The translations under genes were made by a program, and so were the position numbers. Shown one piece after another: positions 32,264 through 58,200 of a DNA stretch of 64,000 bases. Position 1 is the first letter of the stretch. Each line of letters starts with the position of its first letter. The stretch spans positions 124,001 to 188,000 of IMG/VR virus record IMGVR_UViG_3300047510_001118; one strand, given 5' to 3'. The notes under the pieces are model-generated. The model had not been told where the DNA came from, did no database searches, and saw nothing but the letters and a program-made list of their open reading frames with translations.

Positions 32264-32329
32264 GATGTCTGTTTTCACTTGGTTAACTATGATATATATA
32301 GTGCTTCCCTTGACATTTTACTGACAATT

Positions 32330-43234: not shown

Positions 43235-43829
43235 CGTCTGTCCTAATTAATTTAACATTAAATGCTAGAGAAATTCGATCCTCGTTAGTTGGATTGTATC
43301 CTACACCATGCGGCAAATGTCCTGGGAACATTAATAACTTACCTGATAAAGGTTCAAAACTTATTGCGCTGGCACTGGCCGGTGTATAATGATCTAAAAC
43401 TGCCTGTGAAGATATAATATAATCTAAAGCATGATTTTTATAAAATGTTATATTTCCTTGCCCGGCAGTTGCTTTGACATAAAATGTTCCTGATAAAAAA
43501 CTATTATCGTGTATATGGATCGAATTTCCGTTATTTTGATTATTGATATTAAACCAAAAATTTTCTAAATCAATAATAACTAAATCTTCTTTGTAGCCGT
43601 AATCTCTTACACATTGCTCTGCTTGTTCTAATATTTTACGTTCTAAAACTTCTAATTCTTTATATGTACCCGGACGAAAATCTTTACTTTGCCATCCGCC
43701 TTCGTTGCTTAGTTTTCTTCCCTGTGGATCTTTTTCTCTTAGAGAATAGCACAGGGATATCAAATCTGTAGGATCGATATCAGTTTGTTCCCACCAAATA
43801 GGAGTTGGAAAATAATATCCTATATTCAT
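43203..43829 (-). CDS. Fe(II)/2OG oxygenase-like (TIGR02466-type, HxH)
   Basis: NEGGWQS, WFNIN, HIHDNSFLSGTFYV, FPGHLPHGV, RISLAFN. Confidence 0.88.
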   Translation of the reverse strand: MNIGYYFPTPIWWEQTDIDPTDLISLCYSLREKDPQGRKLSNEGGWQSKDFRPGTYKELEVLERKILEQAEQCVRDYGYKEDLVIIDLENFWFNINNQNNGNSIHIHDNSFLSGTFYVKATAGQGNITFYKNHALDYIISSQAVLDHYTPASASAISFEPLSGKLLMFPGHLPHGVGYNPTNEDRISLAFNVKLIRTDDERYRTTYIK

Positions 43830-44623
43830 TTTAATATATCTCTCATAGTTGTAGGAGGTAATTCGTGACTAAAAGCAAATGTATGACTCCATCTAAAGTC
43901 TACTGAATCGCAGATGTAGGCCAAATGACATACATTGGCTGGATAAATTGTAAGAGTTTTATATTTGGACGGTGCTGTTCCTATTAGCTCAAATCCCCAT
44001 TCAGACAATTCGCCGTCGGAGATATTAAACCAACTATCGGCTCTTTTAGGAAACTCGCTAAGTTCTCTCCACTTTTTGTGATTTGGATGTGTTTTGTCAA
44101 CTTGAAAATCATATAATTCTCTAAACATCTTTCCGTGATATTGATAAATCTTTGTTCCGCTGTCGTTAAGGTTATGATCAGTAAACCACATATTTGCTAC
44201 CATTCCATAAACATAGTCAATGTGAGGTATTCTCCAACAGGTTATTGGTCGAGAATTTTTCTTGAAATAAACATTTCCCCACTCGTGTATCTGTGGATCA
44301 AATATGTCAGTTCTGATATTTTTTAAATAAAATTCTTTTATTAAGACACAGAGATCTAAACTTACCCACTCGGGTACATGTATTGTATCGAAAGGATTTG
44401 GATCAAAGTTACTAGGATGATTATTATCTTTTTGTATTGGAAATGATGCTATAAGATTTTTGAAAATTTCAAATCCATCATCTACAAACGGATCTTCTGC
44501 TATCCAGTAACCAACATCTTTGGTTAGTTTGACATATTCTGTCTGCCAGGAGTCCAGAGGTTTTAATTTTAAAACCTTGTTAAAATTATTAGCATCAGGA
44601 TAGCATACTTTAAAATCTATCAT
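43826..44623 (-). CDS. Fe(II)/2OG oxygenase-like (HxD)
   Basis: IPHID, NMWF, SGT.IY, YPANVCH, RWS..F. Confidence 0.7.
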   Translation of the reverse strand: MIDFKVCYPDANNFNKVLKLKPLDSWQTEYVKLTKDVGYWIAEDPFVDDGFEIFKNLIASFPIQKDNNHPSNFDPNPFDTIHVPEWVSLDLCVLIKEFYLKNIRTDIFDPQIHEWGNVYFKKNSRPITCWRIPHIDYVYGMVANMWFTDHNLNDSGTKIYQYHGKMFRELYDFQVDKTHPNHKKWRELSEFPKRADSWFNISDGELSEWGFELIGTAPSKYKTLTIYPANVCHLAYICDSVDFRWSHTFAFSHELPPTTMRDILK

Positions 44624-45204
44624 TTTATATTAAATGTGAGAACGATTCTTTCTTGATCGGTTTTATTTGGCTGGACTCTGTGACGCAAAAATCCAGGAAA
44701 TATTAATACGTCATTGGTTTCAGCAGGAACTGCTCTGTAAAGCGATTCTTCTGGTATTATAGGATACATTGTTTTATGATATTCAAGAGGATCTTTAAAT
44801 TCAATATATCCGGCACCCGGCGGAAGTTTTATATAGGCAGCGACAGCAAATGTAACATTGTTGTGATTGTGCTCTAAAGTTTCTCCAGAGTTTCCGTGTC
44901 TATTAAACCACGACTCTGTTACTTCACTCCACCCGTTAGTGAATCCGTATTCTCGACGAATATGTGCGATGCGTTCGCCTAGCCAATTTTGAAAATGTGC
45001 TAGTTCGTCCCAGGTGTGTGGTTGTATTTCCTTGTCAAGCGATACTGTAGATATCGCCTGTCCTTTTTCTAATCGAGAATTTTCTTCAACTTGAGAAAAC
45101 AAATTCTCAATTTTAGGGCCTAAAATGTCATAATTAAATTCGTACCTAAATTTCCAAATGTCTGGAGGAAATACGAACAAACCGCCATTATTAAGATGTA
45201 ACAC
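44620..45204 (-). CDS. Fe(II)/2OG oxygenase-like (TIGR02466-type, HxH)
   Basis: ESWFN, EHNH, FPGFLRHRV, RIVLTFN. GTG start at 45204 with GAGGA SD. Confidence 0.85.
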   Translation of the reverse strand: MLHLNNGGLFVFPPDIWKFRYEFNYDILGPKIENLFSQVEENSRLEKGQAISTVSLDKEIQPHTWDELAHFQNWLGERIAHIRREYGFTNGWSEVTESWFNRHGNSGETLEHNHNNVTFAVAAYIKLPPGAGYIEFKDPLEYHKTMYPIIPEESLYRAVPAETNDVLIFPGFLRHRVQPNKTDQERIVLTFNIK

Positions 45205-45439
45205 CCTGTGTTTCCTCGAACGTCTCAAGTGCTAGAGTAAGACCCATGAGAACACCTTCCATCTTTAAAACATCGACAGATAAATCTTGTCGACGAGTAA
45301 AATCAATAGAAGTAATTCCATATGGATTTAATTTAATGTTAGCAAAATCTTCTTCCATTTTTGATAATTCTTGTTGTGCTTTTTCTTTTTCAGAAGTTAG
45401 ATTAGCCATCGTCTGTTGAATTTTTTCTTTGAAACTCAT
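45191..45439 (-). CDS. Small coiled-coil hypothetical protein (82 aa)
   Basis: Heptad-like helix, AAGGA SD, inside the operon. Confidence 0.8.
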   Translation of the reverse strand: MSFKEKIQQTMANLTSEKEKAQQELSKMEEDFANIKLNPYGITSIDFTRRQDLSVDVLKMEGVLMGLTLALETFEETQGVTS

Positions 45440-45443: not shown

Positions 45444-46232
45444 TCATCCTTTTTTATATCTAGTTAGTACTGCTATAGAACGTTTTAATCTTGAGGCTAA
45501 ACTATCATGATTTAAAATCACACAGTTTGCGGCATAATTAAAGGCTCTTTCCTTTTCTTTATCACGGTCATTGGCGTTTTCTATTTTAACATCATAACTG
45601 GATAAGGACAAGGATTTTCTTGAAACAGGTATTAATTGGCATAGAGGAGTTCCAGCTCGAACTAGAGTTTTGTCATTTAATACATTCCAAAAAAGTTGGA
45701 CATTTAATACGTGTCCGTATTTCATATCAAGGAACCCCGTGGCTGCTGTGAATCTGCTTTCGTTGTTATAGGTTACAGGCAGTTGAAGTAGCATAACATC
45801 ATCACTGGCTTCAACTCGCCACGGGGTTTCTAACTTTATTACAGTTTTTAAAGTTGTATTGGGATCATCTATCAGCGGTTCTACTTGACTACGTGTATGA
45901 CCAGAAACATAGGCATCACGTCCTTCGCTGACTTTATTGAATCGATAAGGTTCTCTCCATTCCATGCTTACACCGTCACCGTTAGTTTGAATGATGAAAT
46001 CGGCAGGTGCTGGCACTACCCAGCCTGTTGAAATAATTTTTCTAATTCCTGGACAATTTTTAGAACTCAAAGTTTCAGGAAGGTCACCGACCTGTTCCTG
46101 TTCCATAAACGGTCTAACTAACCTTGATGATGGAATAATTGGAAAAAGATCTACTACACCAGGCTCTAGACTATAAAATCTGATATAGGGCTCTTCTTTT
46201 TTACCAAATAATCTTTTACAGAGCGTAGTCAT
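45444..46232 (-). CDS. Conserved hypothetical; paralogue of 30846-31676
   Basis: See the shared motif blocks listed for the paralogue. Confidence 0.75.
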   Translation of the reverse strand: MTTLCKRLFGKKEEPYIRFYSLEPGVVDLFPIIPSSRLVRPFMEQEQVGDLPETLSSKNCPGIRKIISTGWVVPAPADFIIQTNGDGVSMEWREPYRFNKVSEGRDAYVSGHTRSQVEPLIDDPNTTLKTVIKLETPWRVEASDDVMLLQLPVTYNNESRFTAATGFLDMKYGHVLNVQLFWNVLNDKTLVRAGTPLCQLIPVSRKSLSLSSYDVKIENANDRDKEKERAFNYAANCVILNHDSLASRLKRSIAVLTRYKKG

Positions 46233-47832
46233 CTTTTCCGCCGTAGATATTATCTTTCAAATATTGATAATGCGTCGGTAGTGTTTTAATATACTCAACA
46301 ACAAAATCTCTATATTCTTCGTATCTACGTTTTGTAAATCCTATTTCTTCTTCTTTAAGTTCGCGTTCGATTCTATCACCGCCGAAGAAAATTAATTCTT
46401 TGGTCGATATTGATTTAACTCCCATGCCGGCTGCAATGAAAATATTTCCAGTATAGTCTTGAAAGTATCTTTGGTTACCGGCTATGTTGCCGACCAAATT
46501 CGGGTACTGTGCTTGATACAACATATAATCACCGTGCATATCAGGACAATATTCGTGTAGTTCAGTACACCAGCGCCAGTAAGGAGTGTCAGTCCTCATC
46601 GACAGAGCATAGTGTTGAGAAACAAAATCTCTAAACTTAGTAACTTCAAAATCTACAGCAAAATTATAGCCTTCAATTTCTGATCTAGTAACAAAGCCCT
46701 GTCTACGGTTAAGAGCATCGACTAGTTTAATAATGTTTTCGTGAGTAGTTAACAGTCCAGTAGACTCTAATGGTTCAACAAATCCATAACTTAGGCCGAC
46801 ACCAACTACATTGGCTAACCATGCTCTTCGACGCTTACCATGTCTAATTTTTACAGGAAACATTTCTGCTTCTTCTGCGATTTTAGGACTGTGTTTTACA
46901 GCCAAATGTGCTCTAAATTCTTTTTGAGCATCCTCGGGTGTTACAAATCTAGTAGAAAATACGTAGCCAGTGCCAATCCTGTTCCAGAGAGGAATATTCC
47001 ATACCCAGCCATTGTCCAAGGCGTGGCAGTCAGTGACATTGTGCATTTCGCGCTCTCTGTCGATGTATGGTAATCTACAGGCCCAAGCCATATCATTGGC
47101 TAGATATTTGTCAAATGGTTTAAATTCAGAACCCATCCAACCTTCTAATAAAATTGATTTGAACCCAGTACAATCGATCCATAGATCCGATTTTAAAATT
47201 CTACCATCATCTAACATGATATCTGTGATATCGCCTCTTGTATTTTTTTTATGCGAATGTACATCGCCTACTATATGTTCAACTCCGTGGGGTAGTGCTA
47301 TTTTTTCTTTGAGATATTTTCCAAAAAGTTGAGCATCAAGATGATATGCTGTATCCCATTTAAATTTATAATTTCTTAGTATACCTTTTTCGTCTTTGGT
47401 TTCTTTATTGTGTTTTGCTAACAGCGTATTTCCTGTAACAAAGAATTCTGCAAAACTTTCTGGCGGATATTCGTCAGGATATAATGTTGATAATTCGCTC
47501 CATGATTGTAGGCCGCCCGGCTTATCAGTATAATCTAACCCAGCACTAAATGGGTATTCAAAAGATTCCCCCTTGCCTTCTCTAAAATTAGTAAAACGAA
47601 TAGAATTTTTATATGTGGCATTACAAGCGGCCATCCAGTCTTCGTCTTTAAGATCTAATAACTGAAGAAATTTATTAATGTGACCTAAGGTGCTTTCACC
47701 AACTCCGACAGTGCCAACTTTGGAAGATTCGACAAGTGTAATCTTTAAATGTGGACACAGTTTAGATAATGCTGCCGCAGTCATCCAACCAGAACTTCCA
47801 CCACCTACTATTGTGACTGTGTTAATCTGCAT
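46216..47832 (-). CDS. Flavin-dependent halogenase family #4
   Basis: GGGSSG, GVGEST, ATYK, YHLDA, WVWNIP, FVEPLESTG. Confidence 0.92.
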   Translation of the reverse strand: MQINTVTIVGGGSSGWMTAAALSKLCPHLKITLVESSKVGTVGVGESTLGHINKFLQLLDLKDEDWMAACNATYKNSIRFTNFREGKGESFEYPFSAGLDYTDKPGGLQSWSELSTLYPDEYPPESFAEFFVTGNTLLAKHNKETKDEKGILRNYKFKWDTAYHLDAQLFGKYLKEKIALPHGVEHIVGDVHSHKKNTRGDITDIMLDDGRILKSDLWIDCTGFKSILLEGWMGSEFKPFDKYLANDMAWACRLPYIDREREMHNVTDCHALDNGWVWNIPLWNRIGTGYVFSTRFVTPEDAQKEFRAHLAVKHSPKIAEEAEMFPVKIRHGKRRRAWLANVVGVGLSYGFVEPLESTGLLTTHENIIKLVDALNRRQGFVTRSEIEGYNFAVDFEVTKFRDFVSQHYALSMRTDTPYWRWCTELHEYCPDMHGDYMLYQAQYPNLVGNIAGNQRYFQDYTGNIFIAAGMGVKSISTKELIFFGGDRIERELKEEEIGFTKRRYEEYRDFVVEYIKTLPTHYQYLKDNIYGGKDDYAL

Positions 47833-47858
47833 ATTCTTTCCTTTATAACAACGCTGAT

Positions 47859-47866
47859 TATTTATA
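47859..47866 (-). promoter_or_regulatory. T4-type late promoter TATAAATA heading the right arm of the enzyme island
   Basis: Exact TATAAATA just downstream of a terminator and upstream of an AAGGA SD. Confidence 0.65.
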
Positions 47867-47887
47867 GTAGTATTTTTTGTTGATCAA

Positions 47888-47920
47888 CAAAAAAGGCACT
47901 GTTTTAGCAGTGCCTTTTTG
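47888..47920. terminator. Rho-independent terminator ending the fibre operon
   Basis: AAAAAGGCACTG-TTTTAG-CAGTGCCTTTTT with A/T tracts on both sides. Confidence 0.85.
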
Positions 47921-47937
47921 TTCTAGATTAAAGAAAT

Positions 47938-48429
47938 TTATTCTTTATTGCCCCACCAACCGTCAAATCGCTTCCATGCTGGTAGTTCTGAACTGCTTGG
48001 ATGATTTGGTTTTTCTGAGGAAGGTTCCTCTGTGGCAGCTCGAGCCATAATGTCTTCTAAACGTTCTGGTTCTTGTGCTACAGGTTTTGGTATTAAGGAC
48101 TTAACATTAGTAACATGTTGTGCCCAAGGGCCGTTTGAGCTTAATGTTCCCGTTTCCATAAGTTCGTGATAAATCATGTCTAATTGCTGGCCAATTTGAC
48201 CATAGGCCACAGACCTTGCCACAGAATTATCTGTGAACGGACCATCCCGCTCTACCCATACCATTCTTTCCTGATTTGGACTCCATTCTAAAGTCCAGTC
48301 TAGCGTAATTTCATCAGGAGCATCGACCCACTGAATCGTAGCATCAGGTCCATTATAAATTTCATAATCTTCGCCGGGTTCGACTATCTGTGAAACCCAA
48401 CCTTGATAACTGATAAGTGCTTTTTTCAT
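47938..48429 (-). CDS. Probable tail-fibre assembly or accessory protein
   Basis: AR..AY..I.QQLDMIY...W..HV..VK..IPKP motif, downstream of the fibre genes. TATAAATA-N5-ATG start. Confidence 0.55.
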   Translation of the reverse strand: MKKALISYQGWVSQIVEPGEDYEIYNGPDATIQWVDAPDEITLDWTLEWSPNQERMVWVERDGPFTDNSVARSVAYGQIGQQLDMIYHELMETGTLSSNGPWAQHVTNVKSLIPKPVAQEPERLEDIMARAATEEPSSEKPNHPSSSELPAWKRFDGWWGNKE

Positions 48430-48452
48430 AGTGTTATTTATACTCCTAACCT

Positions 48453-49310
48453 TTATTTTTTATATTCTTCAATTACTACAATTCCTGGGCGACCGTCTGA
48501 TCCCCTGTGCCCATGGAAATATCCACCTGTGCCGCCAGTTCCTGGCGCACTGTGTCCTTGGTGATTATGACTAAAGTGGCCTCCTTGCGGATGTCCGCTA
48601 GGTGCTGGACCACCAAAGTGACTAGTGCCGCCTGGACCAAAACTATGATGATGTGCGCCACCACCACCTTGATGTATATTTAAATCTCCACCACTACCTG
48701 AGGCACTAACTCCACCCGAGTGCTGGTTTTGTCTATTAGCGCCATGTCCTCCGCCTGCTGACACATATGGACCAAATGAACTACCGTTGCCGTTACCGCC
48801 AGCGCCCGCATAGTATGTTCCGCCACCGCCGCCGCCGATAGTAATACCTACTGAACTAATACTAGTAACATCCATAATTCGTTCAGCATAACCACCTGCT
48901 CCGCCACTTTCTCCGTGACCACTGGCACCACCTCCTGCGCCCTGTACCTTAACCCGAATATATCGAACACCTGCTGGTCTATTCCAAGTACCGTTGCTAG
49001 TAAACACTGACATCCCGCTAAAACCTATTTGAGAGTATTCGTAGGCATTATTTGATGGATTAACTCTAAGAACTGAATTTGAGCCGCCAACACTAGTGAG
49101 TCCTGTGCCTCCTTTACCTACAGGCATAGTTCCGGTAGATACACTGCCAGCAAGATCAACAGAGCTTCCTGCTAATTTACCCGAAGAAACTGCCCCACCT
49201 TGAATATTAGTGGTTGTAATGGTAGTGGATGCTATCTTAGCATTAGTAATAGTGCCGTCGATAAATGATGCACTAACTAAACGTTTTAATGATTGATAAT
49301 CAAATGGCAT
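48453..49310 (-). CDS. Short fibre protein with Gly/His-rich C-terminal domain (paralogue A)
   Basis: MPFDY start, pentapeptide shaft, FTSNGTWNRPAGV...QGAGGG Gly-rich domain. Confidence 0.8.
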   Translation of the reverse strand: MPFDYQSLKRLVSASFIDGTITNAKIASTTITTTNIQGGAVSSGKLAGSSVDLAGSVSTGTMPVGKGGTGLTSVGGSNSVLRVNPSNNAYEYSQIGFSGMSVFTSNGTWNRPAGVRYIRVKVQGAGGGASGHGESGGAGGYAERIMDVTSISSVGITIGGGGGGTYYAGAGGNGNGSSFGPYVSAGGGHGANRQNQHSGGVSASGSGGDLNIHQGGGGAHHHSFGPGGTSHFGGPAPSGHPQGGHFSHNHQGHSAPGTGGTGGYFHGHRGSDGRPGIVVIEEYKK

Positions 49311-49322
49311 GCTACTATCCTA

Positions 49323-50183
49323 TTAGAAAAATTCTGTAATTACTACGATTCCAGGACGACCATCAGAACCTCGATGTCCATGGAAATATCCGGCAGTTCC
49401 GCCAGTGCCAGGAGCACTGTGTCCTTGGTGGTTATGACTAAAGTGGCCACCTTGCGGGTGACCTGCTGGTGCTGGGCCTCCCCAAAAACTGGCTCCTCCC
49501 ATTCCCGATGAACGCTGTTCGTGGCCACCGCCTGAACCAGTATGTATGTTAAAATCGCCGCCGCTGCCAACTCCACTTAGACCACCGTTGTGGTTGTTAT
49601 GTCTATTGGCGCCGTGGCCTCCACCTGCTGACACATATGGACCAAATGAACTACCGTTGCCGTTACCTCCGGCATTGTTATAGTATGTTCCGCTACCGCC
49701 ACCACCTACAGTAATACCAACGTTATTGATACTATCGACATTTAACAGTCTTTCAGCATAGCCACCTGCAGCGCCACTTTCACCGTGACCGCTGGCTCCG
49801 CCAGCACCGGCCTGTACTTGGATCCAGATATATCGTACTCTGCTATCTCCCTTACTCCAAGTTCCGTTTCCGGTAAAAACTACCATTCTATAAATGCCTG
49901 TTGGGCGGAATTCAATACTATTATTTGATGAATTAGTAGCAAGTAGATTATATGCGCCACCGGTGCTTGTACTACCTGTTCCGCCTTTGCTAAAAGGTGT
50001 AGTTCCGCTGACTACACTAGAACCAAAGTCTACTGAACCAGAACCTAATTGGGTTGCTGTAATAGTATTAGGGGCTAGTTCTGCGTTGGCTACAGCATCA
50101 GTGGCAAAGTCCGATCCAACTAGAGTTGAATTAACTAAAGCACTGTTTGATAGTTGTTTTAATGATTCATAATCAAATGGCAT
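49323..50183 (-). CDS. Short fibre protein with Gly/His-rich C-terminal domain (paralogue B)
   Basis: Same architecture as paralogue A. Confidence 0.8.
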   Translation of the reverse strand: MPFDYESLKQLSNSALVNSTLVGSDFATDAVANAELAPNTITATQLGSGSVDFGSSVVSGTTPFSKGGTGSTSTGGAYNLLATNSSNNSIEFRPTGIYRMVVFTGNGTWSKGDSRVRYIWIQVQAGAGGASGHGESGAAGGYAERLLNVDSINNVGITVGGGGSGTYYNNAGGNGNGSSFGPYVSAGGGHGANRHNNHNGGLSGVGSGGDFNIHTGSGGGHEQRSSGMGGASFWGGPAPAGHPQGGHFSHNHQGHSAPGTGGTAGYFHGHRGSDGRPGIVVITEFF

Positions 50184-50193
50184 ACTTTATCTC

Positions 50194-51045
50194 TTAATAA
50201 TAATTTGTTACTACAACAATACCCGGGCGGCCATCTGAACCTCTATGCCCGTGAAAATGTGCTCCAGCACCGCCGGTTCCTGGCGCACTGTGTCCTTGGT
50301 GGTTATGGGCAAAATGGCCGCCCTGTGGGTGGCTACTAACTGCTCCGCCGCCAAAATATGTATCTGCTGTACTTTGAGCACTATAAGCATGATGGCTAAA
50401 ACCTCCGCCCATGTGTAAGTTTAGGTTTCCTCCGGATCCCACGCCGCTAACTCCACCTGAGTGCTGGTTTTGTCTATTAGCACCGTGGCCTCCGCCTGCG
50501 GAAATGTAAGGCCCAAAACTAGTACCTCCTCCGTTACCGCCAGCATTGGCGTAATAAGTTCCGCTACCTCCGCCGCTGATAGTAATACCCACTGAACCGA
50601 TACCGGTAACATCAAGAAAACGTTCAGCATAGCCGCCGGCTCCGCCGCCTTCACCGTGTCCTGAGCCGCCGCCGGCGCCACCTTGTACTTGTACTCTTAT
50701 GTATTTTACACCTGCTGGTCTATTCCAGGTGCCACTACCAGTCCAAACTTGAATACTAGCAACTCCGTGTTGTTCCCAACTTAGACTTGAACCGTTACTT
50801 TGAAGAGCCCTATAACCACCACCAAAACTGGTAATTCCAAGACCACCTCGACCGATAGGTAACGTACCTGTGGTTGTACCTGATCCAACATCTACTGCTC
50901 CGGACGCTAACTTGGCTGCTGTTACGTTTCCGTTTACTATGTTACCGCCAGTGATAGTACCGTCTTGTATGTCACTGGCTGTAAGAGCTCCGTTAACAAC
51001 AGCATCACTTGTGATGTTTTTAAGCGTTTGATAATCAAATGGCAT
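50194..51045 (-). CDS. Short fibre protein with Gly/His-rich C-terminal domain (paralogue C)
   Basis: Same architecture as paralogue A. Confidence 0.8.
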   Translation of the reverse strand: MPFDYQTLKNITSDAVVNGALTASDIQDGTITGGNIVNGNVTAAKLASGAVDVGSGTTTGTLPIGRGGLGITSFGGGYRALQSNGSSLSWEQHGVASIQVWTGSGTWNRPAGVKYIRVQVQGGAGGGSGHGEGGGAGGYAERFLDVTGIGSVGITISGGGSGTYYANAGGNGGGTSFGPYISAGGGHGANRQNQHSGGVSGVGSGGNLNLHMGGGFSHHAYSAQSTADTYFGGGAVSSHPQGGHFAHNHQGHSAPGTGGAGAHFHGHRGSDGRPGIVVVTNYY

Positions 51046-51063: not shown

Positions 51064-51891
51064 TTAAATACCAGATTCTAATAACCAACCGTATGATGAG
51101 TTGGAATAGACTAAACTAAATGCAGCACCAGCAGTTGTAACTGTCATAGTATCTAACTGACGCATGATACGCTGACCGTTGTTACCGACTGTTAATGCTC
51201 TAACGTTAAATGTTCCTGCTAGGTCGATAAACCAAACTTGATCTCCTGTTGCTGGACTTGCTGGCAATGTTAAAGTAATCGCTGTTGAGCTAGTATCAGC
51301 AAAAACTCGATCGCCTGCGGCCAGTGTTACAGAACTGTTTCTAGTAACCCACGGTTTACCGTAGGTTCTTTCTGTAAAAATCTTTGTCATCAAATGGTAA
51401 TCTGCTGACGGAGTAAATGATGAGCTGGCTGTTACAGTTGAACCGTTAAATGTAGCGGTGCCTGATACTGTTAAACTTCCACCCAAATTAGATGCGCCAG
51501 TACCTACAGTAAATGTTGATGATCCTGTTACTGATGTATTGCCGCTAAATGCAGCAGTAGTAGCAGTTAAAGGACCACCAGTGTTAACATAGGCTATGTA
51601 ATCAGTACCATTGGATGCTAGACTCACTGCCGCACCGGCTACTAAACTCCAGTTAGCACTGGCTGTTACGGCGGGATTTCTAATCACTCCTGCTGGAGTG
51701 TTTAATGTGACAGTGCCGCTGGTTGAATTATAAAATGTCTGGTGCGCACCAGCAAACAACGCCGGGGTCGGTAATGTCACAGTATAAGGCGCCGTACCGG
51801 TAAGTGTCGTAAATAGACCCTGATCTGGTGTTGTATATGTAATTGATCCGGATGTCGTCGTTACCGGAAACGAGGTATTATATCGTGCCAT
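51064..51891 (-). CDS. Tail-fibre-related protein
   Basis: Two T-x-TLP modules; DTS..A.T.TLPASP..GD.V..ID..GTF fibre repeat. Confidence 0.7.
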   Translation of the reverse strand: MARYNTSFPVTTTSGSITYTTPDQGLFTTLTGTAPYTVTLPTPALFAGAHQTFYNSTSGTVTLNTPAGVIRNPAVTASANWSLVAGAAVSLASNGTDYIAYVNTGGPLTATTAAFSGNTSVTGSSTFTVGTGASNLGGSLTVSGTATFNGSTVTASSSFTPSADYHLMTKIFTERTYGKPWVTRNSSVTLAAGDRVFADTSSTAITLTLPASPATGDQVWFIDLAGTFNVRALTVGNNGQRIMRQLDTMTVTTAGAAFSLVYSNSSYGWLLESGI

Positions 51892-51906
51892 TTGCTATCC
51901 GCCCTC

Positions 51907-52227
51907 TTATGATGTTGAAGTTTCGATACCGTAAACTGTAGATCCAACTGTGGCTGCGCTAGACCAAACAACTACGTTAATACCTGCCTGCGCTACTAGA
52001 CCTGTTCTTTCAAACACACCTTTTGGCGCAATAACTGTATCGTATTCAAGATAATCTTGATCGTTTGGTGTTGCCGACGTTGCTAATGCCAGTCTTACTG
52101 TAATCGATGTTGTGTTTCTATTAGTAATAGATACATTGAATACAGAATAGTAACCAGTTGGTACAGTATATACTACTGTATTTGTTGTGGCTGGGATTGC
52201 CTGTACTCCTAATCTTCCTGTTGCCAT
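51907..52227 (-). CDS. Small beta-rich virion protein (106 aa)
   Basis: T.VYTVP, NVSI.NR, LE.TG.V pattern. Lies in the fibre operon. Confidence 0.65.
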   Translation of the reverse strand: MATGRLGVQAIPATTNTVVYTVPTGYYSVFNVSITNRNTTSITVRLALATSATPNDQDYLEYDTVIAPKGVFERTGLVAQAGINVVVWSSAATVGSTVYGIETSTS

Positions 52228-52241
52228 GTTTTATTTCTCCA

Positions 52242-55200
52242 TTATCTTTGCATAAAGAATCCAAGTGCAACGGGAGCCCCGTCGATGCCACCTGTGAAAT
52301 TCATCTTACTTGTAACATTAAGTGCTACACCCGTTGTAGTACTAATGCTATTACCTGCTATATATACCACACCCGCGGTCAATGTATTTACGTTTAATGA
52401 GCTCTGACCACCGCCAATTTGTGCAGTGATATATGCTTTAATTGCTCGCTGTGTAGGTACCACGTTATCGCTATCCGCTGTAAAGAACGGATCTGTGCTG
52501 AACTGTGTAATGATTGCTGATCCAATACCTAGTTCCACAGAACCCAACTGCAGACTGTTCAAACCGCTTAGGTTAAACGCCGAAGCGTTCAATGTAGCAG
52601 TACCAGTTGCTTGTTGGACTCCGAACAAGTCGCCAACGTTAAAGTTACCGTCTTGGTCAGTGGCTGTAAAGAATACTCGTCCGCCGCCGCTAAACAGTTC
52701 TTGATTAGCCTGACTTGCTGTGCTAATATCCACATTTGGATAGTTAGTTTGGTTGAAGTTACCTGTACCGATGTACAAGTAATCGTGACCAGTTAATCGA
52801 ACCTGACTGTACTTAATTCTTGTGGTAATTAAATCGCCGTGTCCTGGTGCTTGTAACACAGTTAAACCTGGGTTAATTTGGAAGGTTGCTGTGTAATTTC
52901 CTAGATCACCCAGTACGTTATTTACAGTAACTAGTTTGAAATACAATCCTGGTAAACTTGCGAACTCGACGTTAGCACCCGCTGTTGGAATATCGTACAA
53001 GCCGTTTACTGAAATAAATGTGCTTGGTTGATATAGGTTAGCGTAGCCGTCACCTAGTGTTTCTGCCTGTGCTGTTGAGTTATCAGCACCTCGATTTGAG
53101 AAGCTCGGATTACCTAGAGCCCCGTCACCTAGACGAACTCTAAATGTAGCCGGTAACACCTTGTTAGGATCAGTTACTGAGAACACAGGACCTGCTCTGT
53201 ATGTCATACCAGATATAGTAGCGTCAGTTAGTTGAACTGGTGTTGTTGATCCAGCAGTAGTACTGATTTTGAAACTCGATGCTGTGATAGTTGAGCCAAT
53301 TACATAATATGTGTTTTCTTCAACTAGTCCGCCTGCTGTTGTTCCAAAGAATTCAACCGGCATGCTGTCAACTAAGTTAATAGTGTTGCTGACATTAATC
53401 ACGTCTGTTGATGCTACAGTTGAAGAAACTGTTCCTTTTGGATATCCTGAACCAGGTTCGATCATACGAACTTCTGCTACTATGCCTGATGCCACTCTCA
53501 CGCGACCCAGTGCTTGAGCTCCGGTTCTAACTGTATTTGCTATAGTTCCCGATGCGGCTGATATCAGAGCAAATATTCCAGTATTGCTTGGATTACCAAA
53601 TGCTCCGCTGATCCAACTTGAGCTAACTGTTAACGTTCTTGCTGTCCAGTTTAGACCATCTGGACTTGTAGCACAGGCTGTTGTACCAGAGGCTGTGGCT
53701 ATAAACATACCTTGTCCATAGGTTACACTAGTCCATGAAGTACTAGTTGGCAATCCTGCTGGACTTGCTACCCAAGTCTGTCCTCTATCGATACTTACTG
53801 CAGCATTTCTTCCGCCGCTGGCCACTGCTACAAATCTACCATTACCGTAGGCTAATCCTGACCAAGTAGTGTTTGCTGGCAGAGTTCCGCCTGCTGTCCA
53901 ACTTGTACCGTTGGTAGAATATGCTGTTTGATTATTGCCTGTGGATATAGCAACGAATGCCTTGGCTCCATATGCTACTGCTGAATATGTTCCTGCTCCG
54001 AGACTTGGAATAGTTCTTGTTGTGAAACTTGTACCGCTAGTACTTGATGCCGCACTTGATGCGCCACCAACAGCAACATAAATGTTATTGCCGTAAGCAA
54101 GGCTTACTAAATTGCTGGCCGGTAAAGCAGTACCTGCTGTCCACGCAGATATTGTTGAAATGCCTGTTCTAGTAGTATATGCTATATCAGTACTGCCTGT
54201 GGCTATAGCCACATATTTGGCTGTTGAATCTAATATAGTTACTGTTGGTGTTGTAGTATATCCTGCTCCTGTATTTGTAACAGCAATACTTACTACTCCG
54301 TCTGTTGTGCCTGTTGCTGAAACTCTTGAAGGAGTTAAAATCGCTGTAGTACCAATATACAATAATGAAGCAGTGCCGTTACTTACAGTACCTGACTGAT
54401 GTACTGGCCCGCCAACACCTGTTGTTCCTGCTAATGTTACACGATACCAATTTTTAATGTTAGGTGTAACTGTGGTGTTTGTATGATACAGAATAGAATC
54501 TAAACTAACTGATGTGCTGGAAGCCCACACTGATCCTGTAAATGGATCACCAATTGAAACATCTGGATTACTGTTGTATCCTCGACCCCAACTTTCCACT
54601 GTTACTTGTGTTATTCGATCTGTGGCCGCAGAAACAGTCGGTGCTACGTTATAGCCAGATCCAGGAATAGTCACTGTTACATCTGTAATTCTGCCATCTA
54701 ATACGGCACAGGTAGCAGTGGCGCCCGTTCCTCCACTTACTGCGGTAAACACAATAACTGGCGGTGTGTCATAACCTTGGCCGCCGTCTAGAATTTCAAC
54801 TCTAGCAACTTGATCTGCTGTGGCTGCGCCTGTGGTATTTGCTTCGCCTAAGATAGCCCTAAACTGTGCGCCACGACCGCTTAATCCGCCAACTACGGCA
54901 GTGGCAACTGCTCCTTCTCCACCGGCATATACTACACTAGACCAGTTTGCGCTGGAAGGTAATACACCTGCGTTGGCCCAGGTCACACCGTCTGGGGAAT
55001 AACTTGTTGAAGTACTGTTATTAGCAATAGCAACAAATTTATTATCACCGTAGCAGACATCTTTCCATGTTGTTGTTGAAGAAAGTGTTCTAGCAGTAGC
55101 ATTAAATCCTGGAGCACTGTAAGAAACTCTTGGTTCAATGATATACGCTGTTGTTAAATCTAGAGCGGCTTCTATTGGTGTTCCTGGAACAGCATGATCC

Positions 55201-58200
55201 CAGCCAGCGGCTAAGATCGTCATAGATCCTGATGCTGTTGATAATGTTACTGCTCCGCCTCCTGGAGTTGTACTCACAGTAAATTGTGTAGCAGTTAATC
55301 CTGCGCTTCTTACATAGTAAGGAATATTAGCAGTAATTCCGCCGAATGCTGTGCCTGTAAAGTATATAGGCATGTTAGCATATAGACTTGCTGTGCTAGC
55401 CACAGTAATAAGATTACTAGTTACTGTAGTATTAGTAGCAGTTAACGAAGTAAATGAATCTTTATACACCTGTGCTACTTTACTACCATTTAAGAAAGTT
55501 AAGATATTAGCATATTGACCTACACCAGTACCAGCAGTAATTTGTATTCTCATGCCGTTATAAGCATTAGTTAATGCTGTATCTGTGGCTGCGATTGTAA
55601 TTTCAATGTCAGTACCGCTTTGTGCAGCGTTTTGTGCGCTGGCATAGTTGGTGCCGCCAGACCCATTACCGTCATCTGGGTCAATAATTCTTGTTTCAAA
55701 TACTGCCCCGTCTCGATATTCGTCTGCTAGAGCCTCGATATTATAACCACTACCGCTTACTGTGTGAACTGTGTTGGAATAATCTGAGCCAGCATTACCA
55801 AATTCTAAACGTAGAACTTCCATAGTGCCGTCTGTTACTACGTTAGTGATCTGTGCTTGAGCGGCTTTATTATCTACTCTAGCATATAGCGGTGTTTCTT
55901 TACTAGATACACCTTCAGCAATAACACCATATGTACCATATGAGCTGTTACCGTTGGTAGCACGGATACGTCCGCCTTTTTCTGCTAGGTATCCAGCGTA
56001 TCCATAGTAGTTAAACACAGATACAAGTTCTGTTAATGAGTCACTACCAGTACACCATACACCTAGACCGTCTGACATAATAGTAGTAAAGTCGTTCTTA
56101 ACCATAGACTTGTTACCGCCATTGTGTAAACTTGAATCGATCTTAGCACCAGAACAGCCTGTTCCGAACATTGTTACGTTCTGGCTATAGTGAGATCTTG
56201 TTAAGATCCATACAGATTCGTCGTTTGGACCAAACCCTGGGTCAAGGGCAACATAGGCGCCAGCAGTTGGTCGTTTAGTTCCGAAATCATTTAGTGCGCT
56301 CAAGTCACCGTTTAAACCAATTAATGTACAATTTCTTAGGCCGCAGGCATTTCTTGTACGGAACATATCTGCGTATTCAGAACCTTTAACTGCGTTTAGA
56401 TACAACTGTGCCGAACGTGTTGTCTTATAGTTGCCTGGCCAACGTAAATCGTAGACTAAGGCATCCATATATTCACGCATATCTCTCTTACATGAAGTAG
56501 GATCGTAAGCATATACCACAGTCATTGAGCCTGTGCTGGTAGTTAAACTTACATCATTGCCGCCTTTGGTTAGGCTAATTGTGAATTCAGTAGCACTTGG
56601 TACTGAAGTTACGTAGTAAGTTTCTGTATTAGATACACCACCGAAAACATTAGTAAATCTTACAGGATCGTTAACTGAAAGATTATGTGCCAATGCTGTT
56701 TCTAAAATATTGGAAGGACTTGTAGTGTCTGTGACTTCTCCGCCGTATGTAGCCGCAATGTATGCGCTGGCTTCTTCTGCTAAGAAATCTAAGTTTGCTT
56801 TAATAACTAAAGAAGAATTAATCAATCCAGAATCGTTAGCATAAGACATAGTGCCGTGTATTTCTGGTTGTTCACCTACACCAAACTCTAGGATATCAAT
56901 AATAATATCCATACCATTTTTTGCTGATGTAGAAGCATCGTCGCTACTTGATATTGTATTAACTATTCTTCTACGTAATTCTCTAAATGTCTGTAGAGTA
57001 GCACGTTTTTGTTCACCAATAACTTTGCTGGCCTGTGCTTGATAGTAGGCCATACCTGCTTTTACAGCACGGAAGTTACTGCCCATGAGCATGTCATAGG
57101 TTACAGCATCAATAACGTAACCCATGTCGCGTTGACATGTAACTGAATCGTAGACTAAGTTAGGATAATTTTCACCGATCCAATCTGACACTAGGCTGAT
57201 AATTGTTGCTCGAGCAGACTGCAGTGTTGTAGCCTGAGTTAGCATATCGGCACTTACCCAAGAAATATCTGGTAAATTAGTTGTTTCTGCCAGTATTGTT
57301 AGCCCAGTTCCACTAGTGAAAGATGTTATCGCAGTACCGTTCCAAGTAGCAGATAATGTAAATTGTGTACCAGATGGAATAGTTTTAACATAATATGTTA
57401 CCCCAGAATCTAAACCGTTAGCACTGGCCTGTGGACGAATTTCGTCACCAATATCCAAACCGTGAGCCGATGCTGTGGTAAATGTTGTTCCGCCAACAAT
57501 GTCAGTAATTGTTACTCTTGGCACACCTGTTGTAAGCCCTTGGTCGATAATATTTGTAATAATATCAACTAAACTACCTACAAGTGTTGAGGATGTAGCA
57601 TCACCGGTTGTACCTGTAATTCTTGTAACGGTACCTTGCAGTGTTGAATATACTCCGCCGCTGGCAATTGCTTGTAATACGGTCTTTAATTGTGCGTAAG
57701 CGTTTAAAGTTGCTGTCTTATCTGCCGAGTCAATCTGTAAAGCATTTGTTAATCTTGAATAGTAAGCAACACCTGCTTGTTTGCTGGCAAAACTACCACC
57801 ATATGTTAGGTCGTAACGTACAGCATCAACAATATACTCGACATCTCGCATACATTTTTCTTCACTGTACACAATTGAAGGGTAATTGTCGTCAATAAAT
57901 TGTTGTACTTCTGCGGCAATAAATTTTTTGTTTTGAGTGATTAATTTTGCTGCCGCATGATTTTCAACATCATAACCAGTAAATGTTGGCCACTGGAATC
58001 GAGGCTGTTTACCATTTCTGATGTAACTAACGATAGTTTCAATACCTAGTTGTGCCTTAGCACTACCGCCACCTACCGCCAGTCCTCGAATTTTATATTT
58101 TAAGAATTTAACTAGACCTAAACTGGCTTTCTTTTGGCTTGCTAAAACTGTTAGAGCAGATTCTAAATTTCTATAATAGCTCTTACCAGCGATTATTGAA

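What the first reader, a model, noticed from the sequence alone, without database searches (positions are those of the whole stretch)
48453..51045. Three tandem fibre paralogues with an invariant His-rich, glycine-rich tip next to the enzyme island
Seen: divergent N-terminal shafts but near-invariant C-terminal HPQGGHF(S/A)HNHQGHSAPGTGG and FHGHRGSDGRPGIVV. Paralogue A has 15 His in its C-terminal domain and none in the first ~95 aa. Established: Gly-rich phage adhesin domains form polyglycine-II bundles, HxH motifs in trimeric T4 fibres bind Fe/Zn, and NO66/MINA-type JmjC enzymes hydroxylate His. Inference: these are metal-loaded adhesins (iron-mimicry receptor use), or the substrates of the adjacent oxygenases and halogenases, or a heterotrimeric tip.
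Basis: partly seen in the sequence, partly recalled or inferred. Interest (0 to 1): 0.62.

Follow-up and report, generated by a model that had tools for sequence, protein, structure and literature searches.

The report
Three histidine-rich phage tail-fibre paralogues
Three neighbouring genes of an uncultured freshwater jumbo phage encode short tail fibres with a known glycine-rich receptor-binding fold but an unusually histidine-rich tip, and they travel between phage families in one block with their chaperone and a cluster of halogenase and oxygenase genes whose natural targets are unknown.

Summary
Three minus-strand ORFs (285, 286 and 283 aa) are paralogues with 13-15 His each. All His but one lie in the C-terminal 190 residues.

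They are not a new kind of protein. Residues 96-285 match Pfam Gly_rich_2. The AlphaFold model matches the solved TNF-like plus glycine-rich domain of cyanophage Pam3 fibre gp24 (Z 16.7), the Bxb1 tail tip and ALK/LTK.

The next gene (163 aa) has the size, position and two-domain build of the Pam3 chaperone gp25. A conserved terminator follows it.

The His-richness is lineage-specific: Pam3 gp24 has 0 His, S-SM1 has 2, S-RIM44 and Sf-FR1 have 6-9, and this lineage has 13-15. It does not track the presence of the enzyme island.

The new point is mosaicism. The backbone is like PA5oct and Atu_ph07 (TerL 56% identical). The glycine-rich domains, chaperone, VirX1-type halogenase, gp43-like gene and the 2OG/JmjC genes are collinear with Syn9 and S-CREM1 at 42-64% identity, where TerL is 33-34%.

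That fits, but does not show, fibre modification by the island enzymes. Metal binding and a heterotrimer remain untested.

The parts
50194..51045 (-). Paralogue C (283 aa), first of the triplet. Short fibre with a C-terminal TNF-like plus glycine-rich (TG) domain.
   Evidence: ORF. PF21722 at 32.7 bits, above the cut-off. PHROG 863 at E 1e-44. It holds position 1 in 67 of 69 related triplets.
49323..50183 (-). Paralogue B (286 aa), second of the triplet. Same architecture.
   Evidence: ORF. PF21722 at 17 bits, below the cut-off of 24.3. It is 62-63% identical to A and aligns over its whole length. PHROG 863 at E 1e-40.
48453..49310 (-). Paralogue A (285 aa), third of the triplet. Conserved 12-residue N-terminus, variable repeat shaft (about 13-95), TG domain (96-285) with 15 His.
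   Evidence: AlphaFold model at pLDDT 75.6. VIA-align gives Z 16.7 to Pam3 gp24, 14.3 to the Bxb1 tail tip and 9-10 to ALK/LTK. Residues 13-97 match a fibre repeat in PDB 9eg4_H (E 0.002).
47938..48429 (-). 163-aa candidate tail-fibre chaperone (Pam3 gp25 / Tfa type).
   Evidence: Model at pLDDT 83: beta-sandwich 1-60 plus four helices. The only PDB chains with Z of 2 or more are Pam3 gp25 (Z 3.8, 54 aa, 24% identity) and TfaMu (Z 2.2). Homologues follow TG multiplets in L100 (E 1e-24), L097 (E 2e-17), Syn9 and S-CREM1 (49-53% identity).
48435..48442 (-). TATAAATA, a T4-type late-promoter-like motif in the 22-nt gap before the chaperone gene.
   Evidence: One of only 3 exact copies in 64 kb. 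Present within 60 nt upstream of the chaperone gene in 33 of 64 related loci. This is a consensus match only.
47886..47922 (-). Intrinsic terminator (GC-rich hairpin plus U run) right after the chaperone gene.
   Evidence: Fold energy -18.7 kcal/mol, z -4.9, and 0 of 200 shuffles fold as well. A hairpin plus T-run is present in 48 of 61 related loci, with different stem sequences.
47859..47866 (-). TATAAATA late-promoter-like motif about 20 nt upstream of the halogenase start.
   Evidence: Exact in 19 of 61 related loci; the printed examples of the others carry nnTAAATA variants at the same place.
46216..47832 (-). Flavin-dependent halogenase, an orthologue of VirX1.
   Evidence: PF04820 at E 4e-104. 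PDB 6qgm (VirX1) at E 1e-197 over the full length. It is 64% identical to S-CREM1 and 55% to Syn9/Syn10.
45444..46232 (-). 262-aa Syn9-gp43-like protein of unknown function. It overlaps the halogenase stop.
   Evidence: phrog_7084. Found in only 16 phage records; the 12 listed are cyanophages that hold the VirX1-type halogenase, at 31-53% identity, and in all 12 it lies next to or overlapping the halogenase gene. The Atlas cluster is named 'Gp43 family', with DUF6065 in a minority of members.
38241..45228 (-). Run of 11 ORFs of about 200 aa: 2OG-Fe(II) oxygenases, two DUF6445 proteins, a JmjC protein and unassigned ORFs.
   Evidence: Pfam hits. Gene-by-gene collinear with S-CREM1 at 42-63% identity.
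42512..43234 (-). 240-aa JmjC_2 protein of the ribosomal-oxygenase type (a protein hydroxylase).
   Evidence: PF08007 at E 2e-16. The best PDB relatives are NO66 (E 2e-8), YcfD (3e-4) and MINA53 (9e-4), over the catalytic core only, residues 108-204.
31673..38027 (.). Far side of the island: three more Trp-halogenase-family genes on the plus strand (33510-38027) and three 2OG oxygenases.
   Evidence: The held genome has four PF04820 genes and all lie here.
51064..61919 (-). Upstream fibre genes: 3225-aa giant fibre (52242-61919), a 106-aa ORF and a 275-aa fibre ORF.
   Evidence: The order 106-aa ORF, 275-aa ORF, TG x3, chaperone, halogenase is kept in all 77 related IMG/VR loci, broken only by contig ends (5 loci carry an extra 2OG gene before the halogenase). 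These genes are not part of the block shared with Syn9 and S-CREM1.

Best explanation
The three genes encode paralogous short tail fibres, or fibre-tip proteins, of an uncultured freshwater jumbo myovirus.

Build of each protein:
- a 12-residue N-terminus common to all three
- a variable repeat-type shaft (about residues 13-95)
- a C-terminal TNF-like plus glycine-rich (TG, Pfam Gly_rich_2) domain of the kind solved in cyanophage Pam3 fibre gp24

Inferred from Pam3 gp24-gp25: each protein trimerises with the help of the single 163-aa chaperone encoded just downstream. The chaperone covers the distal glycine-rich tip during folding and then leaves. The distal loops then contact the host surface.

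Inferred from loop topology: the His residues sit at or near the turning points of the glycine-rich hairpin loops. They would crowd the distal, receptor-facing end as a conserved His-rich surface. This surface is a lineage-specific addition to the fold. One loop (213-238) is specific to each paralogue and probably gives the three fibres different fine specificity.

Shown: the TG domains, the chaperone, a VirX1-type halogenase, a gp43-like gene and the 2OG/JmjC genes form one collinear block. The block is shared with T4-like cyanophages, although the rest of the genome is related to PA5oct and Atu_ph07. The block was therefore exchanged as a unit.
For: Fold and family:
- PF21722 scores above its cut-off for paralogues A and C.
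- Foldseek E 4e-6 to Pam3 fibre 7ypx_A.
- VIA-align Z 16.7 (164 residues, 26% identity) to Pam3 gp24, 14.3 to the Bxb1 tail tip and 9-10 to ALK/LTK TG domains. The next hit falls to Z 4.5.
- Pam3 gp24 is a 280-aa trimeric fibre followed by the 162-aa chaperone gp25 (PMC9608196).

Chaperone:
- Same position, length and two-domain build as gp25.
- Only gp25 and TfaMu reach Z of 2 or more among 237 chains.
- Homologues follow TG multiplets in four other lineages.

Module stability:
- The gene order is the same in 77 of 77 IMG/VR loci and in the ENA/Logan contigs L010-L015.
- The three paralogues hold stable positions.

Transcription unit:
- A conserved terminator follows the chaperone gene.

Lineage-specific His content:
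- 0 His in Pam3 gp24 and 2 in S-SM1.
- 6-9 in S-RIM44 and Sf-FR1, 11-14 in Syn9, S-CREM1 and P-TIM40.
- 0-14 across 92 cluster representatives, falling with distance from the query.

Mosaic genome:
- TerL is 55.6% identical to PA5oct but 33-34% to Syn9, S-CREM1, P-TIM40, S-RIM44 and S-SM1.
- The sheath is closest to Phosso, Atu_ph07 and PA5oct-type phages.
- The block genes are 42-64% identical to Syn9 and S-CREM1 and collinear with them.
Against: - Trimer formation and chaperone binding were not shown. The one complex prediction gave no verdict.
- Sequence-level similarity to Pam3 gp24 and gp25 is not significant (hhalign E 0.1 and 0.04).
- The chaperone fold match is weak (Z 3.8) and covers only the N-terminal domain.
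- The N-terminal part is not the long helical bundle of Pam3 gp24. It is modelled poorly (pLDDT 51-66).
- Variability is inverted relative to typical receptor-binding proteins. The shaft varies most and the tip is conserved, so the tip may not set host range.
- Placing the His at the distal end rests on loop topology, not on measured coordinates.
Confidence: 0.72

Rival explanations
1. The fibre tips are substrates of the co-transferred enzymes. The VirX1-type halogenase and/or the JmjC and 2OG oxygenases would halogenate or hydroxylate residues (His, Tyr, Arg, Trp) of the TG domain late in infection. This adds to the best explanation rather than replacing it.
For: - The TG domain, chaperone, halogenase, gp43-like gene and 2OG/JmjC genes are collinear at 42-64% identity between two myovirus backbones whose TerL is 33-34% identical.
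- The link recurs in a further lineage, L100: three LamG+TG proteins, a chaperone homologue and a halogenase of 48% identity.
- All phage records with the long VirX1-type halogenase that I tested also hold a TG protein, mostly next to it. Three of five cyanomyoviruses without that halogenase have no TG protein.
- A late-type TATAAATA motif precedes the halogenase.
- VirX1 is a trimer with a large open active site (PMC8407142); as far as I know its natural substrate has not been identified (from my own knowledge; the primary paper was not held).
- The JmjC protein is closest to the protein His/Arg hydroxylases NO66, YcfD and MINA53.
- JmjC_2 is present in the five His-richer carriers and absent in three His-poorer ones.
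Against: - His content does not track the enzymes. L100 fibres have 2-4 His beside the halogenase. S-SM1 has 2 His beside 2OG genes. S-RIM44 and Sf-FR1 have half the His with the full island.
- In S-B64 the halogenase lies 85 kb from the only TG gene, among replication genes.
- A conserved terminator separates fibres from enzymes.
- One recombination event could move a 13-gene block with no functional link.
- The published views of these enzymes are DNA repair or metabolic roles (PMC3037559, PMC10452541).
- The JmjC trend rests on 8 related genomes.
- There is no biochemical evidence.
Confidence: 0.22
2. The His-rich tip is a metal site. HxH pairs and the invariant His would bind Fe, Zn, Ni or Cu, either to stabilise the trimer as in T4 gp37 or to mimic a metal-loaded ligand for receptor binding.
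For: - Each chain has 2-3 HxH motifs.
- Nine His are 98-100% conserved over 120 homologues.
- The most conserved His-rich stretch, 237-264, is the only part of the domain the monomer model cannot place (pLDDT 33-34). That is expected if it orders only in a trimer or with a ligand.
- In P-TIM40, S-RIM44 and Sf-FR1 some of these loop positions carry Cys instead.
- HxH iron sites in T4 gp37 are established (Bartual 2010, as cited in PMC11705849).
Against: - The HNH and HGH motifs are not kept in S-RIM44 and Sf-FR1, and Pam3 gp24 folds with no His at all. The fold does not need a metal.
- T4-type sites lie in an interdigitated trimeric needle, a different architecture. In Pam3 the TG domains touch only loosely.
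- The sample is a freshwater metagenome, which weakens the marine iron-limitation argument.
- The geometry could not be measured.
Confidence: 0.3
3. The three paralogues co-assemble 1:1:1 into one heterotrimeric fibre tip rather than three homotrimers.
For: - Exactly three tandem TG genes with one chaperone recur in this lineage (77 loci), in S-RIM44 and Sf-FR1, in L097 and in L100.
- The shared 12-residue N-terminus and the strict positional orthology fit co-assembly.
Against: - S-CREM1 and S-SM1 have a single TG gene and Pam3 gp24 is a homotrimer.
- The shafts are only 37-43% identical between paralogues. That is hard to reconcile with one regular trimeric shaft.
- No complex prediction of this assembly was made.
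Confidence: 0.12
4. They are non-structural 'tail fiber assembly' proteins, or monomeric gp38-like adhesins that cap the giant fibre, as the RefSeq and PHROG labels suggest.
For: - PHROG 863 is labelled 'tail fiber assembly'.
- Syn9 gp38 and its relatives carry that label in RefSeq.
- T2/S16-type gp38 also has glycine-rich motifs (PMC9608196).
Against: - The fold match to a gp38 receptor-binding domain is weak (PP01 gp38, Z 3.1 over 64 residues), against Z 16.7 to a true fibre.
- The N-terminal region is a fibre-shaft repeat that occurs 10-32 times in giant proteins.
- A separate chaperone-like gene follows.
Confidence: 0.08

Closest known systems
Pam3 tail fibre gp24 with its chaperone gp25 (PDB 7YPX, 7YFW; Wei et al. 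2022, PMC9608196)
   Same: - About 280 aa in length.
- C-terminal TNF-like plus glycine-rich domain (Z 16.7, 164 residues aligned, 26% identity).
- The C-terminal strand ends in the same G-(I/V)-(I/V)-(I/V)-V-x-(E/Q)-Y pattern.
- The next gene is a chaperone-sized protein of about 162 aa, with an N-terminal beta-sandwich and C-terminal helices.
   Different: - Pam3 gp24 has no His, and its distal tips are the variable part.
- Here the tips are His-rich and conserved, and the shaft varies.
- The N-terminal part is a repeat shaft, not a long helical bundle.
- There are three paralogues per chaperone instead of one.
- Sequence similarity is not significant.
Syn9 gp38, Syn10 and S-CREM1 gp67 (Kyanoviridae; annotated 'tail fiber assembly' or 'collagen-like protein')
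   Same: - TG domain 65-68% identical, with the same His-rich motifs.
- Followed by the same chaperone, VirX1-type halogenase, gp43-like gene and 2OG genes in the same order.
   Different: - Single copy, with an unrelated N-terminal part.
- Carried on a T4-like cyanophage backbone, where TerL is 33-34% identical.
ALK/LTK glycine-rich (TG) ligand-binding domain
   Same: Same TNF-like plus glycine-rich lattice fold (Z 9-10, about 130 residues aligned, 22% identity).
   Different: It is an animal receptor ectodomain that binds cytokines. It has no fibre context and no His-rich loops were noted.
Mycobacteriophage Bxb1 tail-tip protein (PDB 9D93, chains Qa and Qb)
   Same: A TG-type domain on a phage tail tip (Z 14.3, 172 residues aligned).
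   Different: It belongs to a siphovirus tail tip. Its sequence and neighbouring genes were not examined here.
T4 gp37 receptor-binding tip with HxH iron sites
   Same: HxH motifs near the distal end of a fibre (background).
   Different: T4 uses an interwoven trimeric needle, not a TG domain. Here the motifs lie in glycine-rich loops and are lost in related lineages.
VirX1 (cyanophage Syn10 halogenase, PDB 6QGM)
   Same: The neighbouring gene 46216-47832 is a full-length orthologue (E 1e-197).
   Different: It is a neighbour, not part of the fibres. Any link to the fibres is inferred.

Membership tests
Pfam PF21722 Gly_rich_2 (TNF-like plus glycine-rich 'TG' domain) | Profile match above the curated cut-off (24.3 bits) | tested here: met
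   A scores 28.0 bits and C 32.7 bits, covering profile positions 4-224 of 226. B scores 17 bits, below the cut-off, but is 62-63% identical to A and C.
Pfam PF21722 Gly_rich_2 (TNF-like plus glycine-rich 'TG' domain) | Beta-sandwich whose strands are joined by long glycine-rich hairpin loops; structural match to solved members | tested here: met
   AlphaFold pLDDT is 80-97 for residues 66-230 and 265-285. Z is 16.7, 14.3 and 9-10 to Pam3 gp24, Bxb1 and ALK/LTK, then 4.5 for the next fold. The domain is 30% Gly.
Pam3 gp24-type trimeric tail fibre | Homotrimer | not testable with these tools
   No usable multimer prediction was obtained. The single complex job gave no verdict.
Pam3 gp24-type trimeric tail fibre | N-terminal long alpha-helical bundle that docks to the baseplate | tested here: not met
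   The model shows only two 5-residue helices in residues 1-65, at pLDDT 51-66. The region matches a fibre repeat instead (9eg4_H, E 0.002).
Pam3 gp24-type trimeric tail fibre | Hypervariable distal tips on a conserved glycine-rich stem | tested here: not met
   Within orthologue groups the tip regions are as conserved as the core (0.77-0.90). The shaft is the variable part (0.55-0.59).
Tfa / Pam3 gp25 tail-fibre chaperone (for the 163-aa ORF) | Gene directly downstream of the fibre gene; N-terminal beta-sandwich plus C-terminal helical domain | tested here: met
   The gap to paralogue A is 22 nt. The model has strands in residues 2-60 and helices in 68-133. This compares with the beta-sandwich 1-55 and helices 64-162 of gp25.
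Tfa / Pam3 gp25 tail-fibre chaperone (for the 163-aa ORF) | Structural or sequence similarity to solved chaperones | tested here: inconclusive
   Only gp25 (Z 3.8) and TfaMu (Z 2.2) pass Z 2 among 237 chains, and only over the N-terminal domain. Foldseek gives E 1.7 and hhalign E 0.04 over 19 columns.
Tfa / Pam3 gp25 tail-fibre chaperone (for the 163-aa ORF) | Binds the fibre's distal domain | tested here: inconclusive
   The 3:3 complex prediction scored 0.00, reported as 'no answer'.
T-even gp38 adhesin (polyglycine-II sandwich) | Structural match to the gp38 receptor-binding domain | tested here: inconclusive
   PP01 gp38 RBD gives Z 3.1 over 64 residues at 27% identity. Wei et al. report only a loose resemblance between gp24 and S16 gp38.
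T4 gp37-type HxH metal site | HxH motifs conserved across relatives | tested here: inconclusive
   Present in this lineage, Syn9 and S-CREM1. Degraded in P-TIM40 and absent in S-RIM44 and Sf-FR1.
T4 gp37-type HxH metal site | Six His from three chains around the three-fold axis; bound metal | not testable with these tools
   No trimer model and no coordinates were available. The HxH-bearing stretch has pLDDT below 50.
VirX1-type flavin-dependent halogenase (neighbouring gene) | Full-length similarity to VirX1 | tested here: met
   E 9.7e-198, residues 2-532 against 3-529 of 6qgm.
Ribosomal-oxygenase-type JmjC (NO66/MINA53/YcfD) (neighbouring gene) | JmjC_2 catalytic core | tested here: met
   PF08007 at 59.9 bits. 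NO66 at E 2e-8 over residues 108-204.
Ribosomal-oxygenase-type JmjC (NO66/MINA53/YcfD) (neighbouring gene) | Dimerisation and winged-helix domains after the core | tested here: not met
   The protein is only 240 aa, and the matches stop at residue 204-214.

The most novel reading that the evidence does not exclude
The glycine-rich fibre tips are the natural protein substrates of the co-transferred enzyme block. A trimeric VirX1-type halogenase and a minimal NO66-like JmjC hydroxylase would decorate His, Tyr or Arg residues at the receptor-binding end of a trimeric fibre. That would be enzymatic post-translational halogenation or hydroxylation of a virion protein to tune adsorption.
Probability: 0.2. 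Interest if true: 0.85.

Novelty: new variant of a known kind. Interest (0 to 1): 0.5.

Why it matters
The fold and the fibre-plus-chaperone logic are already known from Pam3, so the proteins themselves are ordinary.

Three things are worth keeping:
- **A His-rich variant of the fold.** This TG receptor-binding domain has a conserved, His-rich tip with HxH motifs, and its pattern of variability is inverted. It is widespread: 581 word-search hits and more than 6000 profile hits for the family.
- **A concrete candidate substrate.** VirX1 is a biocatalytically important viral iodinase; its natural substrate and those of the many cyanophage 2OG oxygenases have, as far as I know, not been identified. 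The enzymes and the fibre domain move between unrelated phage backbones as one block. The idea can be tested directly in cultured phages (Syn9, Syn10, S-CREM1).
- **An annotation error.** The label 'tail fiber assembly' on these proteins in RefSeq and PHROGs is probably wrong.

Tried and rejected
- **Megablast of the locus against phage records:** no match.
- **Sequence searches of A and of the 163-aa ORF against PDB:** nothing for A, and one chance-level hit (E 0.23) for the 163-aa ORF. NCBIfam gave nothing.
- **hhalign of our alignments against Pam3 gp24 and gp25:** not significant.
- **Complex prediction, 3x TG domain plus 3x chaperone:** 'no answer', score 0.00. It was folded by ESMFold2 without alignments. 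This is no evidence either way.
- **Measuring His clustering in the model:** coordinates are not exposed to the script box. Placement of the His rests on loop topology only.
- **The search for related loci with the alignment:** returned only close relatives of 57-79% identity, so it gave no independent lineages.
- **Context look-ups for distant His-rich and His-poor representatives:** contigs were mostly only about 1 kb long.
- **N-terminal repeat profile:** it does not occur in the window's own giant fibre or other large structural proteins.
- **The MPFDY start motif:** it occurs only in the three genes in the held genome.
- **Sequencing runs:** only four DNA runs of freshwater metagenomes hold the stretch, and they may be its source. 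There are no RNA runs.
- **Cyanophage marker genes:** psbA/psbD and hli families are absent from the 278-kb record, which is 75% complete. A cyanobacterial host could not be supported.
- **The VirX1 primary paper (PMC6875430):** not held.

Full report
**1. Observation**

Three minus-strand ORFs lie exactly at the stated coordinates: 50194-51045 (C, 283 aa), 49323-50183 (B, 286 aa) and 48453-49310 (A, 285 aa). The gaps between them are 10-12 nt. They align end to end at 62-63% identity.

Identity differs by region:

| Region (residues of A) | Identity between paralogues |
|---|---|
| 1-95 | 37-43% |
| 96-212 | 67-75% |
| loop 213-238 | 30-56% |
| tail 239-285 | 77-89% |

- His counts are 15, 13 and 15. 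Paralogue A has none before residue 132.
- The background His frequency is 1.7%, so the enrichment has binomial P of 1e-6 to 3e-5 per domain.
- Each chain has an HNH and an HGH pair. A also has HHH.
- In 120 metagenomic homologues of 60-84% identity, nine His positions are 98-100% conserved.
- Two refinements apply. The first 12 residues are common to all three paralogues. Loop 213-238 is specific to each paralogue and conserved within each orthologue group.

**2. What the proteins are**

- All three hit Pfam PF21722 (Gly_rich_2) over residues about 105-282. A and C score above the curated cut-off.
- All three hit PHROG 863 at E 1e-40 to 1e-52.
- An AlphaFold2 model of A, built on 88 sequences, has mean pLDDT 75.6. 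Confidence is high for residues 66-230 and 265-285, low for the N-terminal 65 residues, and below 50 for 237-264.
- Foldseek finds the fibre of cyanophage Pam3 (7ypx_A, E 4e-6), the Bxb1 tail tip (E 1e-5) and ALK/LTK glycine-rich domains.
- VIA-align gives Z 16.7 (164 residues, 26% identity), 14.3 and 9-10 respectively. The next unrelated fold scores Z 4.5.
- Residues 96-285 are therefore a TNF-like plus glycine-rich (TG) domain.
- Wei et al. (PMC9608196) describe Pam3 gp24 (280 aa) as a trimeric fibre. Its glycine-rich loops run along the fibre axis and end in distal receptor-binding tips.
- Residues 13-97 of our proteins match a fibre repeat in PDB 9eg4_H (E 0.002). The same repeat unit occurs 10-32 times in giant proteins of up to 4408 aa. 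This fits a fibrous shaft.

**3. The gene after the triplet**

- ORF 47938-48429 (163 aa) has no Pfam family. It matches PHROG 1787, of unknown function.
- Its model (pLDDT 83) has a five-stranded beta-sandwich in residues 1-60 and four helices in residues 68-133.
- That is the build of the Pam3 chaperone gp25: 162 aa, beta-sandwich 1-55 and helices 64-162.
- Of 237 PDB chains realigned, only two reach Z 2: gp25 (Z 3.8, 54 residues, 24% identity) and the Mu chaperone TfaMu (Z 2.2).
- This is weak as a score but specific as a result.
- Homologues of this protein follow TG multiplets in Syn9 and S-CREM1 (49-53% identity), P-TIM40 and S-RIM44 (35%), L100 (37%, E 1e-24) and L097 (31%, E 2e-17).
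- I take it as the fibre chaperone with moderate confidence. A 3:3 complex prediction gave no verdict.

**4. Transcription signals**

- A strong hairpin with a U run lies right after the chaperone gene (-18.7 kcal/mol, z -4.9).
- A hairpin plus T-run is found at the same place in 48 of 61 related loci, with different stem sequences. It is a real terminator.
- Only three exact TATAAATA motifs occur in the window. Two of them lie on the minus strand, in the gaps before the chaperone gene and before the halogenase gene.
- The fibre-chaperone unit and the enzyme genes are thus separate units. Both appear to carry T4-type late-promoter motifs. These are consensus matches only.

**5. Distribution and the enzyme island**

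- The neighbouring halogenase (46216-47832) is an orthologue of VirX1, the Syn10 iodinase (6qgm, E 1e-197).
- VirX1 is a trimer with an open active site (PMC8407142); that its natural substrate is unknown is from my own knowledge.
- The island holds four halogenase genes, which are all those in the held genome. It also holds at least nine 2OG/DUF6445/JmjC genes.
- The JmjC protein (42512-43234) is closest to the protein hydroxylases NO66, YcfD and MINA53, over the catalytic core only.
- The order fibre genes, TG fibres, chaperone, halogenase(s), gp43-like gene, 2OG genes is found in Syn9, S-CREM1, P-TIM40, S-RIM44 and Sf-FR1. Each of these holds one to three TG genes.
- In this lineage the order, with three TG genes, is found in all 77 IMG/VR loci and the ENA/Logan contigs.

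His content against neighbouring enzymes:

| Phage or contig | His in TG domain or protein | Neighbouring enzymes |
|---|---|---|
| This lineage | 13-15 | halogenase, 2OG, JmjC |
| S-CREM1 | 14 | halogenase, 2OG, JmjC |
| Syn9 | 11 | halogenases, 2OG |
| P-TIM40 | 11-12 | halogenases, 2OG |
| S-RIM44 | 6-9 | halogenases, 2OG |
| Sf-FR1 | 6-7 | halogenase, 2OG |
| L100 | 2-4 | halogenase of 48% identity |
| S-SM1 | 2 | 2OG genes, no halogenase |
| Pam3 gp24 | 0 | none |

- Across 92 cluster representatives with a full TG domain, His ranges from 0 to 14 and falls with distance from the query. A few other lineages are also His-rich.
- His-richness is therefore a graded, lineage-specific trait. 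It is not a correlate of the island.
- In S-B64 the halogenase lies among replication genes, 85 kb from the TG gene.
- S-PM2, P-SSM4 and Syn19 have no TG protein.
- JmjC_2 is present in the five His-richer carriers and absent in Sf-FR1, S-SM1 and Sf-CH11. This is a weak trend, confounded by relatedness.

**6. Mosaic genome**

- The window's terminase is 55.6% identical to that of Pseudomonas jumbo phage PA5oct. It is only 33-34% identical to those of the cyanomyoviruses.
- The sheath is closest to Phosso, Atu_ph07 and PA5oct-type phages.
- The held record is 278 kb and 75% complete, with related contigs of 369-381 kb. It comes from freshwater metagenomes.
- From the TG domain rightwards, at least 13 genes are collinear with S-CREM1 and Syn9 at 42-64% identity.
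- The giant fibre and the 106-aa and 275-aa ORFs have no counterpart in those loci. The N-terminal part of the TG proteins is unrelated to that of Syn9 gp38.
- The left edge of the shared block therefore lies inside the fibre genes, at about residue 95. This is the usual junction for exchange of receptor-binding domains.
- What is unusual is that the exchanged block carries the enzymes as well as the chaperone.

**7. Mechanism**

Shown: the fold, the paralogy, the conserved gene order, the terminator and the mosaicism.

Inferred from Pam3:
- trimeric fibres folded by the downstream chaperone
- distal glycine-rich loops facing the host

Inferred from loop topology:
- The His lie at or near the hairpin turns: H132 in loop 124-140, H189 and H197 in loop 186-209, H220-222 in 213-234, and H245-253 in 235-262.
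- They would therefore crowd the distal end.

The pattern of variability is inverted. The tip is conserved and the shaft is variable. This suggests the tip recognises something invariant, or has a conserved chemical role. Metal binding and enzymatic modification both fit that, and neither is shown.

**8. Novelty and verdict**

- The proteins are new members of a solved fibre family, in a His-rich variant form, with one chaperone for three paralogues.
- The most interesting residue of the finding is the fibre-enzyme block shared between phage families. It gives a testable candidate substrate for VirX1-type halogenases and for the cyanophage 2OG/JmjC oxygenases.
- Interest is 0.5.

Noticed in passing
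window 8959-10554 and 15758-19060, against 38241-51045: The genome is mosaic. The terminase is 55.6% identical to PA5oct, and the sheath is 41-43% identical to Phosso, Atu_ph07 and PA5oct-type phages. The fibre-tip and enzyme block is 42-64% identical to Syn9 and S-CREM1, whose terminases are only 33-34% identical to the window's.
   Followed up: yes
window 33510-38027 (+) and 46216-47832 (-): There are four Trp-halogenase-family genes within 15 kb, three of them in tandem on the plus strand. They are all the PF04820 genes of the held 278-kb record.
   Followed up: partly
window 45444-46232 (-): A 262-aa Syn9-gp43-like protein overlaps the halogenase stop. It is found in 16 phage records; the 12 listed are carriers of the VirX1-type halogenase, and in all 12 it lies next to or overlapping the halogenase gene. 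The Atlas names its cluster 'Gp43 family', with DUF6065 in a minority of members. It may be a partner of the halogenase.
   Followed up: partly
L001-L004 and L007 (Syn9, S-CREM1, P-TIM40, S-RIM44, Sf-FR1): RefSeq and PHROG 863 label these TG-domain fibre proteins 'tail fiber assembly', and S-CREM1 labels its copy 'collagen-like protein'. The fold evidence says they are fibres with a separate chaperone, so the labels are probably wrong.
   Followed up: partly
L003 (P-TIM40), L004 (S-RIM44), L007 (Sf-FR1); alignment: Where this lineage has His or small residues in the loop tips, other lineages carry Cys. Examples are GYCE in place of GHGE, GCGG, ANC and QHCGG. This may point to disulfides or a mixed Cys/His site.
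   Followed up: no
L008 (Sf-CH11), record positions 103168-109045: In Sf-CH11 the halogenase and 2OG genes are flanked on both sides by PF21722 proteins (353 and 415 aa), rather than preceded by a triplet.
   Followed up: partly
L001 (Syn9 gp39), record positions 31431-32412: Syn9 gp39 (392 aa) gives several partial PF21722 matches, and its C-terminus looks frame-scrambled (rich in W, R and C). It may be a decayed or frameshifted second TG paralogue.
   Followed up: no
P0020: One 90%-identity cluster of these fibre proteins lists a longest contig of 140,429,288 bases. That is far too long for a phage, so it is probably a phage sequence inside, or joined to, a large eukaryotic assembly.
   Followed up: no
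window 51064-51891 (-): The last 90 residues of the 275-aa fibre ORF match segments, many of them N-terminal, of more than a dozen tail-fibre and tailspike PHROGs. This looks like a shared adaptor module located at the C-terminus here.
   Followed up: no
G000 (whole 278-kb record): The record has no psbA/psbD and no hli family match, although its fibre-enzyme block is otherwise known only from cyanophages. The host is unknown and the DNA comes from freshwater metagenomes.
   Followed up: partly
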